DNA of 63,514 nucleotides, the filler included, from Reticulomyxa filosa (Eukaryota > Protista > Foraminifera), in the NCBI GenBank assembly GCA_000512085.1. It is 18 parts of 18 records of this genome, joined end to end, with 100 filler letters (N's around TTAATTAATTAA, not from the genome) between each part and the next. Parts side by side here need not be neighbours in the genome. Positions count along the whole stretch, not along the records: positions 43,575 to 55,582 come from ASPP01000763.1; 17 more parts are not named here. One strand, 5' to 3'. Positions 677 through 55,582 of the stretch are shown in pieces. The notes under the pieces are model-generated. The model had not been told where the DNA came from, ran no database searches, and worked only from the letters and a program-made list of their open reading frames with translations. Position numbers and translations under genes: made by a program. Every line of letters begins with the position of its first letter. Position 1 is the first letter of the stretch.

Positions 677-1522
677 ATGGCTGACAAGAGTAACGAATAC
701 AAGATTGTCGTGTTGGGTGGCGGTGGTGTAGGCAAGAGTGCTCTCACCATTCGTTTGGTAACGGACAACTTTTTGGACGAATACGACCCAACAATTGAGG
801 ACAGCTATCGCAAACAAGTGTCAATTGATGACAAGCCAGCGTTGTTGGATATATTGGACACTGCTGGACAAGAGGAGTTTTCATCGATGCAAGACCAATG
901 GATGAGAGAAGGAAAAGGATTTTTGTTGGTTTACAACATTACCTCAAAACCAACCTTTGAGGAAATTGAAGTATTGCGTGAAAAGATTGTCCGAGCCAAA
1001 GACACGGACAAAGTTCCAATGTTGAGTACCAAAAAGAATTCTTGTTTATGTGTTTGAGAAGAAAATTGATACAATAGAAACCTGTTTTTGTTATATGATA
1101 TGTGTATTTGGATGTTGCTTTTTTTTACGTATACATGCAACAGTGTAATTGCAGGTAATAAATGTGACTTAGCTCAAAACCGACAAGTACCAATTAAGGA
1201 TGCCCAAGCATTAGGTAAACATTTGTTGTATTTTGTTTTGTACATGGTTTTTTTATGCGTGTGTATACGTGACCTAGACTTTGATGTTCAAAAAAAAAAT
1301 TTGACAATGAAGTAACGCAAAATAAAAATTTTGGGGGGAATTTTGGAAATAGTTCAAAAATGGGGTGACTCCTGCGCGTTCTTTGAAACAAGTGCAAAGG
1401 ACAAAATTAACAACGAAGAGGTGTTCTTTGAAGTTGTTCGCAAAATTAGATATCTTGAAAATGATGGACCGAAACCAGGACCAAAGGTTGCGACAAAAGC
1501 ATTCAGCTGTGAAGTTTTATGA
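677..1522 (+). CDS. ras: Ras-subfamily small GTPase, 3 exons (677-1020, 1144-1214, 1353-1522)
   Basis: GGGGVGKS P-loop, YDPTIEDSY effector loop, DTAGQEEF, and after splicing GNKCDL and ETSAK. C-terminal CaaX box CEVL. GT-AG introns restore the frame (KVPI|VIAGNKCDL; AL V|QKWG). Confidence 0.97.
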
Positions 1523-2385
1523 AAAACACAAAGTAATAAGTGAATTTGTTTTTTTTTCCTTTGTTTTTTTCCTTTTTATACCAAAAGAAACACTTGTGTG
1601 TTTAAATTGTTTATCTTACGGAAATGCGAGACGATGTGTAAGAGTGTCATAAAAAGAGCAGTCCTTTGTTAAATTTTGCTTGAGATAAACTCAAAACTTA
1701 TAAATCCTTAACAACTTTCTTGATAGTGGAAAAATCAAGAAAATCTTTTAACGGATGGGCGATATTTTTTGTTAGTGAGTAATAAGAATTGCTTTTGAAT
1801 ACTGTGCACCACAAACATGAATTTTGTTAAAAAAATGAATAATTCATGTTAAAAAAGACGTTGAATATTTTTTGTCATATTTTGAGAAATTTGAATTGAT
1901 ATCAATATTTTACATTTTTCGTAAAGAAATTGATGTGCGGACCGCACAGCAACTTGACGTGGAGGCACAAAACAAAGAAAAAATGCGTGCAATGTTTATT
2001 ATGCTGTTAAACAGATAAAAAACTAGCATATGAGAGAACAATAAGTCGTGAAGAATACGTAAGACAACCAAACACATTTATAAACAAAAAAATCTGCAGG
2101 ATCAACTATGATCTCTTGTCCCAACAGAAAAAGTTTTCTAATTTGTGTGGGAGTTGACAAGAGCAGAATAGAACTTTTATTCGATTTATGTTATTAACAG
2201 TTTTTGTTGGCGATGTCTACTAATAAAACAAAAAAAACACTATTCTTATCTAATAACATTTAAAAAAGAAGCCGGTTGATAAAACAGTATTTTTTTTATA
2301 AACATCACTTTTGAGGAGAAAAAAAAAGTGTAGTTTGGACTGTTCAATCTTGGCTTTTGGAATCTTGTGCAATTCTTGATGTCTC

Positions 2386-3169: not shown

Positions 3170-3455
3170 GGGGGGGGGAAAGAAGGATTGGGGCTCGCTT
3201 AACATCGTAGATTTGGGATATCGTTGGTGGTGCTTGCAAAGCTATCTGCGCTTCCAGCGCTGTAACTTGGACGGCTCCTTGGCCTGCCGCTTGGCTTTCG
3301 TTTGTCGCTGTAACATCGTCGTCTGACGGAGGTGGAAGTTGCGCTCCTTCATTTCAATCCACAATACAGCTTTTTTTTTTCTTATCATTCAAGATACAAA
3401 GAAAAATATATATCGATTTTTTTCTCTTTTTCTTACCTCCATTGTCACCGTCCAT
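3170..3455 (-). CDS. Hypothetical protein, 5' part (MDGDNG...NEGAQLPPPSDDDVTAT...)
   Basis: GC-richer open frame on the minus strand, a short first exon ending at a GTAAG donor, then runs into the gap. Confidence 0.35.
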
Positions 3456-4525
3456 TTTCAAAAAACAATTTTCTTCTGGGGGAAAACTTCAAAGTTCAAG
3501 AAGAAAGTTTCGTGTACTAAAAAGACAAAGGCGTACAAAGTATACCCATTTGGAAACCATAAAAGTTGCATAAGCTCTGGGACACATTATACACTACAAT
3601 TAGCTGAAAAGTCATAATTAAAAGGCGTAAAAAAAAAACTAAATGCTGTTGTAATTTGTATTGTTTTCTTTAAACATTGAATCACTATTTTCAAACAAAA
3701 TAAAACAAATTAAGCTACCTCTTTACTGCAGAACCGATGTTCTACGTAAAAAGGACCGTTTTCTAAGTTGCTAATCGTAACAAATAGATACACATGTTGC
3801 TAAGTATCAAGACTCTGCCAAGAGGTGTTGTACGAGTTCCATGTTTGTCTCTTTAAATCTTTTTTGAGCGTTAATACTAAACAATAACGTCTTTGTTTTA
3901 GTCAAACAAAAAGCGCATGTGGCAAATACGTACAATCCTATTGACTTTGTGGGATACCAGATTAAAGAAAGCATTTTTAATTAACAAAATAATTGTACAC
4001 GCTTTGATTAATTTAAATATGTATTAATTTTTTAAAAAACTCTACTAATTGTTATATTCAAATGGCAATTGCTTAATCCGAAAATAAATCTTCTTAACTG
4101 CAAGCTATGGGTCAAAAGATGATAAAATTACTTCAAAGTATACCCTCTAAACAATTAGACTTTTTCTTTTTTTGTTTTTTTTGCTAAGCTATAAGGAAAC
4201 AATTCGATTTTGAGCATGACATTATTATATGTACGAATGTGTCACAAAGTAAATGTTTCTGCACTCTTTGTGTTAGATCAAAAGTATGCATTTGAAATAA
4301 ACACTATAGAGAAGAGGAAACACATTGAAAAGTGGACAAAATTCTACTTTATACCTCTTGTCGCCGAAGTGTGAAAAAAAAAGAACATTGAACTGTATTT
4401 TTGTTTAACGTCTCCAGAAAGAAGGGAAAAAAAACTGGATTCGCAAACTTTTTTTTAGTTTGTTTTTGTCTTGTTTAACCCAGTGCGGTTAGGTGTATTT
4501 CTTCGTATCAAAGCAGAACAAAATA

Positions 4526-44401: not shown

Positions 44402-45373
44402 TCATGGTGTTCTTTTGGCAACAAAAATCATATCATATGAAGTAGTATCTTGTGTTTCTATACAATACCATTCACCACTACTTCTCTTTCGGATTTCTTG
44501 TCGAATATCGTCAAACATTTGCTTAAATGGATATCCGCTTTTGTATTTAGACTTCACAACACTTTTCATGCTACTACTCAGTAATGAGAAATCTCCAATT
44601 TGATATCCTTGTGTAGTTGACCAAATCATCAAAAACCCATCATCATTATGTCCAAGTAACCGTATATCTTCTTTTTTTTCTACCTTTCCTCTCATTGCCA
44701 TTGTTTGAGAAGTTGGAATGTTTTCACCACGACATACATCAATGATAAAAATTTTGGGGAAATTTTTGAAAGATTCCATTTTATCACAATTAAATGATGC
44801 ACGTATTTCATCAATTGATAAAGATTTTCCATCACTTGTCACCAACATATTTCCATTCTTTCCATGTCCACAGATAATCATTATCAATCCATCATATTGT
44901 TTTGCATTTGTACGAAGTTCAAAATCAACAAATAATCGGTCCATAAATACTTGTACATCTTTTTTTGTCATTTGTGGAGATTGATTACACACAAATTGAT
45001 AATTCAATTCTTGCTCAAATAATTTTTTGAAATTCTTGACATCCTTTTTTTTCACATTTGGAATATTAGGCCATTCTGTGGTATAAATATATTCACTAAT
45101 TCCAATCATTACAACTAATGCGTTCTTTATTATCTTGTATTTTCCACTTATTATCAATTGCTGTAAGGATCTCGAACGTATTTTAAATGAAGGCTCTTTC
45201 GTCATAAATGCTTGTTTAACTGCTTTATCAGAATTAATAACATTGTTCTTCATATCAACTAATTCGAATGTCAAATCTAAACAAGAATAACTCTGACGAG
45301 TCAGCTCTTCTAATGTTAAATCTTTCATTTTTATCAATTTCTTTGTTTCATTCACTATCACATATGCTTGTTG
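44402..45373 (-). CDS. Caspase-like (peptidase C14, p20/p10) domain exon
   Basis: ALVVMIGISEY, DGLIMIICGHG, LVTSDG, F....MESFKNFPKIFIIDVCRG and DGFLMIWSTTQGY. Confidence 0.92.
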   Translation of the reverse strand, partial: QQAYVIVNETKKLIKMKDLTLEELTRQSYSCLDLTFELVDMKNNVINSDKAVKQAFMTKEPSFKIRSRSLQQLIISGKYKIIKNALVVMIGISEYIYTTEWPNIPNVKKKDVKNFKKLFEQELNYQFVCNQSPQMTKKDVQVFMDRLFVDFELRTNAKQYDGLIMIICGHGKNGNMLVTSDGKSLSIDEIRASFNCDKMESFKNFPKIFIIDVCRGENIPTSQTMAMRGKVEKKEDIRLLGHNDDGFLMIWSTTQGYQIGDFSLLSSSMKSVVKSKYKSGYPFKQMFDDIRQEIRKRSSGEWYCIETQDTTSYDMIFVAKRTP

Positions 45374-47991
45374 CTGTTATTTTTGTTGGAAAAATACAAA
45401 TTTACAATAAATTAAAAAAAGAAAAAACAAAACCTCATTTTCTTTTTTTTCTTGTTTGTGATCTTGATTACTCTATTTCAATTCACATACAATTGTTTGT
45501 TTGATCCCTATATAAAAAAACAAAATCATTAAAAAAATTAAACATTATCGATAGAATGACAATCAATATACAATTCAATGGCAACACGAATTGCAAAAAT
45601 ATATTCATTCTTCAAATCATTTTTCCATTTATTTTGATTCAACAACCACGTTATAAAATCATTTCGTGTTAATTGTTCATATTTTTCAATAATTTTAGCT
45701 TTATCATTTTCATCTCTTTCATCCCACCATTTCAAACCTTTTTCCTTCTTTTTTTAAATTTATAATAACAATTATTATCATATTATTATATATGATCAAA
45801 AACAATTAAACAACGATAATCAAACTTCATTGATCTTTTCCAATGTTAACTTCACATTCTGTGTTTTCTGATGTTGTTCACCAAATCTTTGATTAAAAAT
45901 TTTGATCGCTTTTTCATAATATTTTCTTGCTTTAGTTTTATTTCTCTTTGCAAAATGAATATCTCCTAAAAGAACATAAGATTCACCAATGTGTGGATGA
46001 TTGCAATCTAATTTATTCAATCTTAACTCTAATGCCTTTTCTCCAAATTCAATTGATTTGTTCAATATATTATTATTTTTAAATGCACTTGCCAAATAAT
46101 GGAAAGACAAGCCAATATAAAGACGATCATCATTCAAATTTTTACGTCTAATTTCCAATGGTTTTTCAAAATATTGAATTACTTCTTCATTTGTTCCATT
46201 CTTTTCCAATATCAATCCCAACACATCAAATTTCTTTAATATAATATTCAATGCATTCTCATGATATTTGATTGATGTTTCATATTCTCCTGTTTCCAAA
46301 TATGAATTTCCTAAATTATAGGACCATATTACTACATCTATGTGATTTTCATTTAATTGTTCTAAAGAAATTTTCAAGCATTTTTTATAATATTCAATTG
46401 ATTCGGCATAATTTCTTTTTCCATAATGAATGTTTCCCAAATGATTGTAACAAATGGCAACATCAATTTGATTTCCGTCGATTTTTTTAGAATAAATATC
46501 CAATGCTTTTTTGTGATATTCATATGCTTCATCATAGTTTGTTTTCATATAATAAACACTTCCCAAATTGTTGTAAGAACTGGCAATATCAATGTGATTA
46601 CTATCTAATTTTTCTGACCGAATTTCCAACACCTTTTGGTGATATTCAAGCGCCTTGTCGTATTTTCTTATGCTTTCATAAGCATTTCCCAAATTGTTAT
46701 ATGAAGTAATGACATAAGTATGGCCAGGCCCCAATTGGGTTAATTCTATTTCCAATGCCTTTTCGAAATATTGTATTTCTTTGTCATAACTTCCTTTGCT
46801 TTTATATGCATGTCCTAAACGGTTGTATAAATTTCTTACATCAATGTGACCCGATCCCAATTCATCTGATGTTATTTTCAAAGCCTTTTCATAATATTCG
46901 ATTGCTTTATCATATTCTACTTTCATATAATAAGCATTTCCCAAACGTCTGTAAGATTTAGCAACATCAATGTAATCAGATCCCAATTTATCTAATTTTA
47001 TTTTCAATGCTTTTTCATGATATTCGATTGCTTTGTCATATTCTCCTTTCCCATGATATGCATCTCCTAGGTAGCCAAAAGCGTATCCTACTAAAATATC
47101 AGAATCATCTAGTGTTTGCAATCTAACACAAAGCACAAAACGAATCAACGAAATTGCTTTATCAAAATTTAGTATCTTGTATGAATTCTTTTCCTAATTG
47201 AATAAGCTTATCTGTATTAATGGGCCATGAGACAATGAAAATAGGTTGCTTAAAAGTATAATTAATAACAGATTTTTTGGTATGAATAAGATGTTGAGTA
47301 ATGTGAAAATGACCAATTCCATCAATCATACAATCAATCACATAAACACATCCATCGATTGTAATATTATCAAATTTGATATTTTTTGAATGAAATGAAT
47401 AAACAGTATATGGTGAAATTATCTTTTTTTTCATATATTGTTTTGAATTAATCATCATTGAAAAATGGATATCTTGAAAATTCTTTTGATCATTTGATTT
47501 TGCAAATTGATCAAGATTGATTGAAACAATCACAATTCCTTTTTGTCTTTCTTCAATCATTTCATTCACTATCCTAAGCGCTCTCTTGTTTGCTTCGATC
47601 CATGGCTTATTCTGATCCAATTCAATAGTTTTAATATTTTGTGTTTCAACATCAGGATATTTCATTTCTTCATCATTGTTTTCTGATTATTTGCATTTCC
47701 AATTCAATTATTTTTTTTAAAAGAATATATCTTTTAAAAAACGAAAACAAAACTGTTTATGAAATGAATAAAAAGGCGAACAGGGTTAGTATCAAATGCA
47801 ATTCGGAGTTTTTGATTATTGTCGATGTTTTGTCCATTTATATCTCTAATTTTAAACTGGAGTAAATTTTTTGATTGAGTTCTGTTATTGAGGATCTCTT
47901 TCACTTTGTCTTCCAAACTTTTCAGTGACAAGGAGGTGAGCGTCACTTCATGACTTTTATTTTCAAAGTAAACAGAAGCTTGGAAAGACAT
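44402..47991 (-). CDS. Predicted single gene: PB1-like / spacer / ~10 TPR / linker / PB1-like / caspase-like C14 protease. Exons 47991-47754, 47682-45826, 45747-45544, 45472-45434, 45373-44402; 1-nt frameshift at ~47164
   Basis: All four inferred GT-AG introns keep the frame. About 42-aa TPR repeats (e.g. SYNNLGNAY...YDKALEYHQKVLEI). His-Cys dyad context IICGHG and PKIFIIDVCRG. Confidence 0.7.
45826..47160 (-). CDS. TPR repeat array (about 10 repeats)
   Basis: Repeated [S/L]YxxLGxAYxxKGxYDKAIEYxEKALxIxxxxLGxxHxDV units. Confidence 0.93.
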
Positions 47992-53234: not shown

Positions 53235-54593
53235 TTAATCGTGCTTATCCAAGACAAAATCTGAGTGAGAAGCATAAGATATCCCAGTGGCAGCACCTAA
53301 GAAAGCCAACCCAAAAGACCCTCCAATGGCGGTTTTGAGTCCCCATCCAGCAGCAAGTGTCGGTCCTCCCACAGCGACAGCCGCAATGCTACCCATTGTC
53401 GCGTAGACCCATGTCGACGTATGAACGCTGGACAGTGTAGCCACTCCGGAATCGACGAAAGAGTTGCAATGATTAACATTGGAGCCAATTCGATCGATTC
53501 CTTCTTGTTGTCTAATGACTACGTCCCTCAAATCTTTATTCATTTCCCACAGGCTCTGTAACTGTTTTCAAGATGAATTTTTTGGTATATTGTCATCTTT
53601 AACATTGTTTAACAATCTCAATCTTTTCTCTTCCTCACTACTTCACGTAGACAACTCAAACAGTTTTACTAGCTCAATTTTTTTTTTTAAATATATTTGT
53701 TTATTTATATGTTTTATACTGACTCTGTTTTTTTTTTAAAAAAAAAAGGAGTAGCAACTGACATTTGCGTCCATCTGTTTCATTTCTTTCGTAATGTATT
53801 CACTCGGCAACTCTAAATTGTCCGTCCATGGCACAAATTCCATGTCTATATTCGATTCTTGCAGCTGCTCTTGCTTACCTATTTGTGTCTCTTTTTTTTT
53901 TAAAAAAATTTTAAAACCACACAGATTATATATGTTTATATACACAATGTTTTTTTTTTTTGAATTAACGATTTGTAGACGATTGCTTTAATCCTAAGTT
54001 ATACAGATTGTCTTCATTAGTCCCTACTGGATTTAAAGGGGATTGGAACCACTTTTCCTCTGAAACCTTGTCTTTTTCGGACATTTCATTTTTATTTACC
54101 AATAGGTGCAGTCCTCTTGCACATTCGGTTTTAATTTCGAGACGTACACTTTCGAACACTTGCACAAATGCCTCCAATTCACTGTTCTCATTCTTATCTT
54201 TTTCTTTACTTTTCTCAATTAACAATTTCATTTGTCGCGATACAAGCATATTACCTCGCTTTTTTTCTGCTTCGAATTGGCCACGAAATCGGACACTCCA
54301 TGGTCGATCCACTAACTCATCCACTATTTTACGTAGTCTAAATAAGGATTTTTGCGTCTCAAGAAGGAGTTCTGCTTCCTATTGTTTTTGAAGGACGACA
54401 AGAGTGAGCATAATAATAGTATTTCGTTACATAAAGCACCTTCATGACCAGCAAATTTGACATAATATAGTATTCGAGGAAAAAAAAAAATGCTATATTC
54501 AATCCAGAAATTCACAAAATTTTTTAAGCAAACGGTTGTTTTTTTTTTTGGAAAAGAGCATTTTTGAAAAGCTATCAAAAGCAGGCTAGTCAT
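53235..54593 (-). CDS. Qa-SNARE, syntaxin-17-like (SNARE motif plus Gly-rich hairpin double TM)
   Basis: EMNKDLRDVVIRQQEGIDRIGSNV SNARE motif with central Q. About 45-aa Gly/Ala-rich hydrophobic segment VGGPTLAAGWGLKTAIGGSFGLAFLGAATG split by a Lys. Helical Habc-like exon upstream. Confidence 0.7.
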
Positions 54594-54881: not shown

Positions 54882-55582
54882 ATGTCTGCTTTGGCTCCTT
54901 TTCAGCCGCATGGTCGTGGTCGAGGACGTGGGCCGTGGGATGTCCGAGGAGGACGAGGTCGCACGATAGGTCGTGGTTATGGTCCACCAGCAGGACGAGC
55001 ATCTTTTGCAAACTACGCACCTGCTCCGCAAGCAGCAAGGTACGTGAAAATCCTGTAGACAACAGTAACCACAATTTTTTTTTTTTTTTGCTACTCGGAG
55101 AGAATATCTTCCAAAAAAAAAAAAAAACACAAACATATAAAAAAGGCCCCCCCGACATGTGTCGATGTTAGAGCGCGAAGTGTTTCGCAACGAAAACTTC
55201 AGTTGCACACGTTACCATTGCGGGTTTATCCACTACCAAAAGACAGCTCACGACAACACGTGTCACTTTTATGTGCACTGGAGCAACTGGGGGATCGAAG
55301 ATGTCAACCTTATGGCGTTGTGTCATCACCTGTCGGATCGTATCAAGCAGACATGCACGCTGCAAGACCAAGCCCATTCTTCTTCTTCTTCTTCTTCTTC
55401 TAACGCCTTTGCGGTCCAGCGCATTGTCATCTCCTGCTTTCTTGCGGGAAACCGTTTGACTGCTCAAGGCTTAAAAGTCCTTCTCAACGCCATCTTCCCT
55501 TTCTGCTGTGAAAAATTGGATTTAGCAGGGAACGCTTTTGCTGATGATGGTTTTTTTATTTTTTATTTTTTTTTAATTTTTT
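54882..55582 (+). CDS. RGG-box plus RNI-like LRR protein, 3'-truncated (exon 1 54882-55039, exon 2 from 55146)
   Basis: MSALAPFQPHGRGRGRGPWDVRGGRGRTIGRG splices in frame to ...WSNWGIEDVNL...FLAGNRLTAQGL...KLDLAGNAFADDG. Confidence 0.65.

What the first reader, a model, noticed from the sequence alone, without database searches (positions are those of the whole stretch)
44402..47991. Hidden ~1,100-aa TPR-caspase fusion: candidate single-chain sensor-protease system in a protist
Seen: five ORFs listed separately (47734, 47162, 45820, 45538, 44402) lie on one contig and one strand. They join in frame through four short GT-AG introns (47753-47683, 45825-45748, 45543-45473, 45433-45374) plus removal of one extra T at ~47164 (KF|DKAISLIRF). 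The apparent TPR stop (GAA|GTTTGA) is the same donor sequence used elsewhere in the window (e.g. 9193). The product is beta-grasp / spacer / ~10 TPR / helical linker / beta-grasp / caspase-like protease with an intact His-Cys dyad. Known: TPR or alpha-solenoid scaffolds control caspase-fold proteases in bacterial TPR-CHAT proteins and in separase, whereas metazoan initiator caspases use death-fold prodomains. Inference: the TPR array senses a ligand and activates the fused protease in a defence or cell-death pathway.
Basis: partly seen in the sequence, partly recalled or inferred. Interest (0 to 1): 0.85.

Follow-up and report, generated by a model that had tools for sequence, protein, structure and literature searches.

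The report
Foraminiferal TPR-caspase fusion gene, already annotated
The five reading frames really are one roughly 1,100-residue gene of the foraminifer Reticulomyxa filosa that joins a TPR repeat array to a caspase-like protease. The public genome annotation already models it that way (RFI_00725), so it is a real but uncharacterised member of a large modular protease family, not a hidden gene.

Summary
The piece is Reticulomyxa filosa contig ASPP01000763.1. The five minus-strand ORFs at 47991-44402 join in frame through four GT-AG introns plus one 1-nt frame break.

The fusion is not hidden. GenBank already annotates exactly this span as RFI_00725 (1101 aa; UniRef name 'Caspase family p20 domain-containing protein').

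Paralogs confirm each junction:
- L006 holds the 167-aa domain plus the TPR array in one 590-aa ORF.
- L001 reads from TPR into the 'KWW' linker with no intron.
- Many annotated proteins join the KWW linker to the caspase domain.
- Seven annotated R. filosa proteins carry both TPR and Peptidase_C14.

The layout is PB1-like beta-grasp, unknown 167-aa domain, about 10 TPR units, KWW helical linker, a second homologous PB1-like beta-grasp, then a caspase domain. His166 and Cys210 are intact.

Sister genes replace the TPR array with Kelch or zf-TRAF modules.

The substrate pocket is not the canonical caspase one: the QACRG motif reads DVCRG and the 'SWR' arginine is missing. Aspartate specificity is therefore doubtful.

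The sensor, defence or cell-death role is inference only. No RNA or read data were available, so the frame break could be a sequencing error or a young pseudogene. Interest is moderate.

The parts
47754..47991 (-). Exon 1: N-terminal PB1-like beta-grasp domain (residues 1-79). The ATG at 47991 is the first start codon of the ORF.
   Evidence: ORF. It is 100% identical to residues 1-79 of the GenBank product P0182. The AlphaFold model has pLDDT about 80 over residues 1-80. Best structural matches are PB1 domains: MAP2K5 Z 10.0, MEKK3 9.8, Par6 9.6, NBR1 9.5. The domain sits upstream of the 167-aa domain in 8 paralog models. Its 3' end and donor are conserved at L006 nt 1-38.
47683..47753 (-). 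Intron 1, 71 nt: CA|GTTTTG ... ATCAG|A
   Evidence: Read. Identical to the GenBank intron. Donor, acceptor and flanking coding sequence are conserved in L006.
47165..47682 (-). Exon 2, first part: conserved 167-aa domain of unknown fold ('M167'; conserved I-D-G-C-V-Y-x-I-D-C core)
   Evidence: No Pfam hit and no ESM Atlas hit. The model is poor, pLDDT about 55. It is 52-72% identical to the N-terminal region of 13 R. filosa TPR proteins.
47165..47193 (-). Zone in which both reading frames are open and a 1-nt frame break must lie
   Evidence: Three-frame translation. P0040 aligns colinearly across it, with residues 5-176 in frame -1 and 171-589 in frame -2. All 13 paralogs are in frame here. 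GenBank bypasses the break with a 40-nt 'intron' (47233-47194) that drops the conserved VSWPI(N/D) motif.
45826..47181 (-). Exon 2, second part: TPR_12 (kinesin-light-chain type) array. It has seven regular 42-aa units plus cap, truncated and C-terminal units, about 10-11 in all.
   Evidence: Pfam TPR_12 at E 8.8e-97 with 8 stretches. The protein period is 42 aa and the DNA period 126 nt. L006 carries M167 plus TPR in one 590-aa ORF that ends EKINEV*, as here.
45748..45825 (-). Intron 2, 78 nt: GAA|GTTTGA ... AAAAAG|A. The apparent TPR stop codon lies inside the donor.
   Evidence: Identical to the GenBank intron. The same EKINE|GTTTGA donor is conserved and used in L006.
45544..45747 (-). Exon 3: 'KWW' helical linker module (KEKGLKWWDERDENDK...). 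It contains no ATG and has in-frame stops just upstream of the acceptor.
   Evidence: Read. It is homologous to the N-terminal module of more than 20 annotated R. filosa caspase proteins. In L001 it is continuous with the TPR repeats in one ORF, 1415..2257.
45473..45543 (-). Intron 3, 71 nt: AAT|GTTTAA ... AATAG|A
   Evidence: Identical to the GenBank intron. The splice sites are conserved in L001.
45434..45472 (-). Exon 4: 39-nt mini-exon encoding SNQDHKQEKKENE
   Evidence: Conserved with its splice sites in L001, where it encodes NNQDHMQEKKENE. It matches the linkers of P0013 and P0008. GenBank extends it to 45398 through a T-rich stretch (VLFFLFLIYCKF), leaving a 24-nt 'intron'.
45374..45433 (-). 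AACAG|C
   Evidence: The donor hexamer is identical to that of intron 1. The acceptor is shared with GenBank, L001 and L006.
45149..45373 (-). Exon 5, first part: second PB1-like beta-grasp domain, the prodomain directly before the protease
   Evidence: Profile-profile comparison with the exon-1 domain gives probability 93% and E 3.5e-7 over 69 columns. The model shows alternating beta/alpha elements at pLDDT 60-79.
44402..45136 (-). Exon 5, second part: caspase-like Peptidase_C14 domain and stop codon. His166 is at 44866-44864 and Cys210 at 44734-44732.
   Evidence: Pfam PF00656 at 68.3 bits. The model has pLDDT 80. Foldseek's best hits are caspase-6, -8 and -3 at E 2.5e-11. A family profile against PDB hits caspase-3 at E 8e-16. 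The dyad is conserved in 27/30 and 28/30 family members.

Best explanation
SHOWN. The span 47991-44402 (minus strand) is one five-exon gene of Reticulomyxa filosa, GenBank RFI_00725. It encodes a protein of about 1,100 aa with this domain order: PB1-like beta-grasp, a conserved 167-aa domain of unknown fold, about 10 kinesin-light-chain-type TPR units, a 'KWW' helical linker, a second homologous PB1-like beta-grasp, and a caspase-fold protease with an intact His/Cys dyad.

It belongs to a large, fast-evolving R. filosa family. Family members share a [KWW]-[PB1-like]-[caspase] cassette attached to interchangeable N-terminal modules: PB1-like-M167-TPR, Kelch propeller, or zf-TRAF.

This copy carries one 1-nt frame break between the 167-aa domain and the TPR array. 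That is either an assembly error or a very recent inactivation.

INFERRED. The protein is a zymogen. Its TPR solenoid is a protein-binding platform. Its two PB1-like domains drive self-association or partner association, which brings protease domains together (proximity-induced activation). Cleavage then follows in the disordered inter-subunit linker, whose only conserved feature is a basic (R/K)-G pair.

The canonical caspase S1 residues are absent: Q283 is Asp in 29/30 members and the 'SWR' arginine region is deleted. The enzyme therefore probably does not cleave after Asp and may prefer basic P1 residues, as paracaspases and metacaspases do.

A role in regulated proteolysis for defence, self/non-self recognition or cell death is suggested only by the module-swapping, expanded-family pattern.

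Junctions confirmed in paralogs:
- M167 to TPR lie in a single ORF in L006 and L005.
- TPR to KWW lie in a single ORF in L001.
- KWW to caspase are joined in P0004, P0007, P0008, P0010, P0013 and P0041.
- The exon-1 domain precedes M167 in 8 models.
- Seven models carry both TPR and PF00656.

Folds:
- The exon-1 domain matches PB1 domains at Z about 10.
- The two beta-grasp domains are homologous at hhalign probability 93%.
- The protease model matches caspases at Foldseek E 2.5e-11.

Coding constraint: dN/dS against paralogs is 0.32-0.58, and apart from the one frame break there is no stop in the roughly 1,100 codons.
Against: - No transcript or read evidence could be obtained. No run was listed.
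- GenBank splits the homologous locus L001 into a TPR-KWW gene and a separate caspase gene. Separate or alternative transcripts are therefore not excluded.
- The frame break, an 11-residue gap in the prodomain and a gap of roughly 55 residues in the TPR array relative to paralogs fit a decaying copy.
- dN/dS of 0.3-0.6 is only moderate constraint.
- The S1-pocket reading rests on sequence alignment to caspase-3, not on a structure with substrate.
- The PB1-PB1 pairing test gave no verdict.
- The model of the 167-aa domain is poor.
Confidence: 0.75

Rival explanations
1. This particular copy is a pseudogene. It is a recently inactivated paralog whose frame break is real, so no full-length protein is made from this locus, although the architecture is valid for the family.
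For: A frame break lies within 47193-47165, whereas all 13 paralogs are in frame there. There are in-frame gaps relative to paralogs in the TPR array and the prodomain. Other family loci also show frame breaks or tiny annotation 'introns' of 24-40 nt. dN/dS is 0.3-0.6.
Against: There is only one disruption in about 3.3 kb of AT-rich coding sequence, where about 9% of random codons would be stops. The splice sites and the catalytic dyad are intact. The draft assembly shows many similar single breaks, which could be sequencing errors.
Confidence: 0.3
2. These are two or three separate neighbouring genes: a TPR protein, possibly with the KWW module, and an independent caspase gene starting at the ATG of '...IKMKDL'. 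The fusion would be a gene-prediction artefact.
For: GenBank models L001 this way, as 449 aa plus 312 aa. P0180 and P0183 are PB1-like-M167-TPR models with no protease.
Against: - The KWW exon has no ATG and has in-frame stops right after its acceptor.
- The TPR 'stop' sits inside a donor that is conserved in L006.
- Coding conservation (AYVIV-D/N-E, the first strand of the beta-grasp) extends upstream of the internal ATG to the acceptor.
- Seven independent models join TPR and C14.
- KWW is joined to the caspase domain in more than 20 models.
Confidence: 0.07
3. The gene is intact in architecture but is not a defence or death sensor. The kinesin-light-chain-type TPR array would target the protease to cargo or the cytoskeleton for housekeeping or remodelling proteolysis in this organism.
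For: The TPR units are of the TPR_12/TPR_10 kinesin-light-chain/NPHP3 type. No NTPase, death-fold or other immune signalling domain is present. That R. filosa relies on intense microtubule-based transport is from my own knowledge.
Against: The family is expanded, fast-evolving, swaps modules (TPR, Kelch, zf-TRAF) and has tandem copies. That pattern is more typical of conflict or recognition systems than of housekeeping enzymes. No direct evidence favours either role.
Confidence: 0.2

Closest known systems
Animal caspases (MEROPS C14A; caspase-3/-6/-8)
   Same: They are the nearest relatives by sequence and by predicted fold: a family profile hits caspase-3 at E 8e-16, and Foldseek hits caspase-6/-8/-3 at E 2.5e-11. 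The layout is p20-linker-p10, with His in an x-H-G motif and Cys in an x-C-R-G motif. Klim et al. 2018 (PMC5982838) placed R. filosa proteins on the caspase branch.
   Different: There is no CARD or DED death-fold prodomain; a PB1-like beta-grasp stands in its place. The N-terminus carries TPR, Kelch or TRAF modules. The S1 pocket residues are not conserved: Q of QACRG is Asp, and the SWR arginine region is deleted. Asp specificity is therefore unproven.
Paracaspase MALT1 and metacaspases (C14B)
   Same: An Asp stands two residues before the catalytic Cys (D-x-C-R), as in MALT1 and metacaspases. That comparison is from my own knowledge of those sequences. Non-death-fold accessory domains and a possible basic P1 preference are also shared. 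The linker has a conserved (R/K)-G.
   Different: Sequence and profile searches list only caspases among the 60 best PDB hits shown. No Ig domains and no metacaspase-type prodomain are present. Specificity was not measured.
Bacterial caspase-fold proteases fused to repeats (orthocaspases with TPR/WD40; TPR-CHAT proteins)
   Same: The concept is the same: a clan-CD protease on one chain with a TPR or beta-propeller repeat module.
   Different: The protease here is PF00656 of the caspase branch, not CHAT. The repeats are N-terminal. The gene is eukaryotic, with spliceosomal introns. It also has PB1-like domains and a KWW linker.
PB1 and CIDE-N beta-grasp assembly domains (p62, Par6/aPKC, MEKK3/MEK5; DFF40/45)
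   Same: The exon-1 domain model superposes on PB1 domains at Z 9-10 with rmsd about 2 A over about 70 residues. CIDE-N domains follow at Z about 8.3.
   Different: There is no Pfam PB1 hit, and sequence identity is only 12-16%. Whether the basic or acidic PB1 interaction motifs function here is unknown.

Membership tests
Peptidase C14 (caspase/hemoglobinase fold, clan CD) | Pfam PF00656 match above the curated threshold | tested here: met
   68.3 bits against a 21.4 cut-off, E 1e-18
Peptidase C14 (caspase/hemoglobinase fold, clan CD) | Catalytic His and Cys in their conserved motifs | tested here: met
   ICGHG (His166) and IIDVCRG (Cys210) align to caspase-3 SHG and QACRG. They are conserved in 27/30 and 28/30 family members.
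Peptidase C14 (caspase/hemoglobinase fold, clan CD) | Caspase fold | tested here: met
   The AlphaFold model has pLDDT 80. Foldseek's top 50 hits are all caspases or CED-3, at E about 1e-11 to 1e-10 and target-normalised TM 0.6-0.78. This is a prediction, not a solved structure.
True caspases (C14A, Asp-specific) | S1 pocket Arg179 / Gln283 / Arg341 (caspase-1 numbering) | tested here: not met
   The Gln283 position is Asp in 29/30 members. The caspase-3 'YSWR' segment aligns to a gap. No Arg is seen at the Arg179-equivalent loop (N-V-K-K-K-D); that part was aligned by eye.
True caspases (C14A, Asp-specific) | Cleavage after Asp | not testable with these tools
   This needs an enzyme assay.
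True caspases (C14A, Asp-specific) | Initiator-type death-fold prodomain (CARD/DED) | tested here: not met
   No CARD or DED hit in any exon. The prodomain is homologous to the PB1-like exon-1 domain.
TPR repeat proteins (TPR_12 / kinesin-light-chain type) | Multiple Pfam TPR matches with regular 42-aa spacing | tested here: met
   TPR_12 at E 8.8e-97 with 8 stretches. Seven consecutive units are spaced exactly 42 aa apart.
PB1 domain | PB1 beta-grasp fold | tested here: met
   The six best structural matches (seven of the top nine) are PB1 domains, Z 8.6-10.0, rmsd 1.7-2.7 A for the top six, 70-79 residues aligned. The model is at pLDDT about 80 from a shallow alignment.
PB1 domain | Sequence membership (Pfam PB1) and functional OPCA/Lys interaction motifs | tested here: inconclusive
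   No Pfam hit at E up to 1. The N-terminal copy has an invariant Lys12, and the prodomain copy has an acidic I-x-S-D-E stretch, but neither was validated. The complex prediction gave no verdict.
Bacterial TPR-CHAT | CHAT protease domain | tested here: not met
   The only protease family hit is PF00656.
STAND / NLR-type sensors | Central NACHT or NB-ARC NTPase | tested here: not met
   No NTPase domain in any exon or in P0182.

The most novel reading that the evidence does not exclude
Foraminifera evolved their own proximity-activated protease system. Caspase-branch enzymes use paired PB1-like beta-grasp domains, instead of death folds, for head-to-tail assembly. They carry interchangeable TPR, Kelch or TRAF recognition modules and cleave after basic residues rather than Asp. 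This would be an independently built immune or death signalling toolkit in a giant syncytial protist. It would also undercut the use of R. filosa 'caspases' as evidence for Asp-specific caspases in the last eukaryotic common ancestor.
Probability: 0.2. Interest if true: 0.8.

Novelty: new variant of a known kind. Interest (0 to 1): 0.5.

Why it matters
R. filosa is the only non-animal eukaryote reported to have proteins on the caspase branch (Klim et al. 2018). Those proteins are used as outgroups and as evidence about the origin of apoptosis.

Three results here change how they should be interpreted:
- They are large multidomain proteins with PB1-like prodomains.
- Their N-terminal repeat modules are swappable.
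- Their S1 pocket is not caspase-like.

These results also give concrete targets for biochemistry: P1 specificity, PB1-mediated assembly and TPR ligands.

On the practical side, the public gene model has two local errors: a 40-nt and a 24-nt pseudo-intron. The family's models are often split or patched. Catalogues of domain architecture built from them will undercount the fusions.

Tried and rejected
- An exact look-up of the 167-aa ORF in other assemblies, made to see whether the frame break recurs independently, found nothing on record.
- The ESM Atlas search for the 167-aa domain gave no usable hit. Pfam gave only noise (DUF2481 at E 0.012). Its AlphaFold model was too poor (pLDDT about 55) to search.
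- Complex prediction of the N-terminal PB1-like domain with the prodomain PB1-like domain scored 0.24 against a mark of 0.34. That is no verdict and counts as evidence neither way.
- The idea of a STAND/NLR-like sensor was rejected because no NTPase domain is present. Membership of TPR-CHAT was rejected because the protease is PF00656.
- Literature searches for Reticulomyxa + caspase + TPR found 0 papers. A search for PB1-prodomain caspases in protists found nothing relevant. The R. filosa genome paper is not in the searchable library, so I make no claim about its sequencing technology.
Searches were done exon by exon by reference, or with GenBank's own product P0182 as returned by the search tool.
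Full report
**Identity of the piece**

A protein search with the 319-aa caspase ORF returned only Reticulomyxa filosa proteins, the best at 79% identity. A later search returned P0182, GenBank 'hypothetical protein RFI_00725', which UniRef names 'Caspase family p20 domain-containing protein'. P0182 is 1101 aa and sits on a contig of 12,008 nt, exactly the length of this piece. tblastn maps P0182 onto 47991-44405 at 100% identity in exon 1 and in near-perfect colinear blocks after that. The contig look-up confirms record ASPP01000763.1, with the gene at window 47991-44402. The finding's coordinates are therefore those of an existing public gene model. The fusion is real but not hidden.

**Check of the observation**

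The five minus-strand ORFs are present. Pfam assigns TPR_12 (E 8.8e-97) to the 442-aa ORF and Peptidase_C14 (68.3 bits, cut-off 21.4) to the 319-aa ORF. The 85-, 167- and 65-aa ORFs have no Pfam family.

Reading the sequence, all four proposed introns are GT-AG and in frame:

| Intron | Window coordinates | Length | Boundaries |
|---|---|---|---|
| 1 | 47753-47683 | 71 nt | CA\|GTTTTG...CAG |
| 2 | 45825-45748 | 78 nt | GAA\|GTTTGA...AAG |
| 3 | 45543-45473 | 71 nt | AAT\|GTTTAA...TAG |
| 4 | 45433-45374 | 60 nt | GAG\|GTTTTG...CAG |

I reconstructed the exon map of the GenBank product by exact spliced matching. Intron 4 shares the acceptor. At this base composition about 9.4% of random codons are stops, so open frames of 442 and 319 codons are far beyond chance.

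**Independent support for every junction, from paralogs**

- Exon 1 to exon 2. Eight annotated paralogs have the exon-1 domain directly upstream of the 167-aa domain. The first 38 nt of contig L006 conserve the end of exon 1, the donor, the intron and the acceptor.
- 167-aa domain to TPR. L006 carries both in one uninterrupted 590-aa ORF. L005 carries both in one 369-aa ORF.
- TPR to KWW. The L006 ORF ends EKINEV*, exactly as here, and its GenBank model uses the same GAA|GTTTGA donor. In L001 the TPR repeats run straight into the KWW module with no intron. In the window the KWW exon has no ATG at all and has stops just upstream of its acceptor, so it cannot start a protein.
- KWW to caspase. 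Many annotated proteins join them, including P0004, P0007, P0008, P0010, P0013 and P0041. The 39-nt mini-exon and its splice sites are conserved in L001.

Seven R. filosa models contain both TPR and PF00656.

GenBank bypasses the frame break with a 40-nt 'intron' (47233-47194). That removes VSWPINTDKLIQL, yet VSWPI(D/N) is conserved as coding sequence in the paralogs. GenBank also reads the mini-exon on through a T-rich stretch (VLFFLFLIYCKF), leaving a 24-nt 'intron'. In the models I mapped, the introns fall mostly between 55 and 105 nt (one is 155 nt), and the 24-40 nt ones look like annotation patches.

**The frame break**

Frame -1 (the 167-aa domain) is open down to 47165. Frame -2 (the TPR array) is open from 47193. 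A single-base change anywhere in that overlap joins them. The position therefore cannot be fixed.

All 13 paralogs are in frame at this point. Without reads I cannot tell a sequencing error from a recent inactivation. It is the only disruption in about 1,100 codons. dN/dS against the nearest paralogs is 0.32-0.58, which is moderate constraint.

This copy also has gaps relative to paralogs: 11 residues in the prodomain and roughly 55 residues in the TPR array.

**Domains**

- Exon 1 folds, at pLDDT about 80, into a beta-grasp. Its best structural matches are PB1 domains: MAP2K5 Z 10.0, MEKK3 9.8, Par6 9.6, NBR1 9.5. CIDE-N and ubiquitin-like domains follow.
- The roughly 75 residues before the protease are homologous to exon 1 (hhalign probability 93%, E 3.5e-7).
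- The 167-aa domain is conserved, with an I-D-G-C-V-Y-x-I-D-C core, but has no detectable relatives and only a poor model.
- The TPR array has seven exact 42-aa units plus cap, truncated and terminal units.
- The protease model (pLDDT 80) matches caspase-6, -8, -3 and CED-3. A family profile hits caspase-3 at E 8e-16 over both subunits.

**Active site and pocket**

His166 and Cys210 are conserved. In the alignment to caspase-3, however, QACRG is D-V-C-R-G, with Asp in 29/30 members. The caspase-3 'YSWR' segment, which holds the P1-binding arginine, falls in a gap. I see no arginine at the third pocket position; that part was aligned by eye.

The inter-subunit linker is disordered (pLDDT below 50 over residues 215-237). 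Its only conserved feature is (R/K)224-G225, present in 28/30 and 27/30 members. From my own knowledge of MALT1 and the metacaspases, an Asp two residues before the catalytic Cys is part of their acidic, Arg/Lys-binding pocket. I therefore infer that this family may not be Asp-specific. This has not been shown.

**Family context**

The same [KWW]-[PB1-like]-[caspase] cassette is attached to other N-terminal modules:
- Kelch propellers: P0039, P0043, P0047, P0050, P0083, and P0010 as read by eye from its sequence (Pfam found no Kelch domain in it). L003 has a Kelch gene directly upstream.
- A zf-TRAF/coiled-coil module: P0059.

L008 has two family members in tandem. More distant homologues occur in the foraminifera Nonionella stella and Bolivina argentea, the latter with a SAM domain, and in metagenomes.

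Klim et al. 2018 (PMC5982838) reported R. filosa caspase-like proteins on the animal caspase branch. That paper mentions neither TPR nor Kelch. No paper in the library combines Reticulomyxa, caspase and TPR.

**Mechanism**

The gene structure, the domain order, the dyad and the family modularity are shown. The rest is inferred: the TPR array acts as a binding platform, the PB1-like domains drive assembly and proximity activation, the linker is processed at the basic site, and the role lies in defence, recognition or death. The only direct test available, a PB1-PB1 complex prediction, gave no verdict.

**Verdict**

The functional story is untested, and the 'hidden' claim is wrong. The novelty lies in the undescribed architecture (PB1-like prodomains, swappable repeat modules, non-canonical pocket) of an already catalogued protein family. 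I rate it a new variant of a known kind, of moderate interest.

Searches used single exons by reference, or GenBank's own product as returned by the tools.

Noticed in passing
L009 (this contig) and L003, L005, L006: GenBank models of this family contain very short 'introns' of 24-40 nt. Examples are P0182 (40 and 24 nt), P0040 (27 nt), P0004 (28 nt) and P0018 (26 and 34 nt). Most other mapped introns are 55-105 nt. The short ones look like patches over frame breaks or read-through, so family members are often mis-modelled or split.
   Followed up: partly
L001:680-3342: The closest paralog locus is annotated as two genes, TPR-KWW (449 aa) and caspase (312 aa). Yet the mini-exon and splice sites linking them are conserved. 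The TPR array there also has its own frame break near 1415-1449.
   Followed up: partly
L008:725-5108: Two family members lie in tandem on one strand: a 320-aa caspase gene followed by a 952-aa Kelch-KWW-caspase gene. This suggests local duplication clusters.
   Followed up: no
P0059 (RFI_37412), residues ~540-552: In the zf-TRAF-KWW-caspase paralog the catalytic motif reads K-I-F-F-I-D-I-S-R-G. The catalytic Cys appears to be replaced by Ser, so this may be a pseudo-protease.
   Followed up: no
L005:2228-3570: A 369-aa single-exon gene carries a divergent copy of the 167-aa domain (26% identity) fused to TPR units, just downstream of a caspase gene. The TPR similarity continues in another frame after the stop (3334-3570), so another frame break is possible.
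   Followed up: no
L002:108-3181 (opposite strand to the caspase gene): The neighbour of caspase paralog P0007 is an 873-aa protein with a weak nSTAND3 hit. Large WD40 proteins flank several family loci (L002, L004, L007).
   Followed up: no
window 53235-53543 (-) and 55159-55582 (+): There is a 102-aa ORF with a Gly/Ala-rich hydrophobic tail and no Pfam family. At the piece's edge there is an ORF with a weak LRR_6-like stretch (E 0.047). Neither appears among the genes called on this contig.
   Followed up: partly
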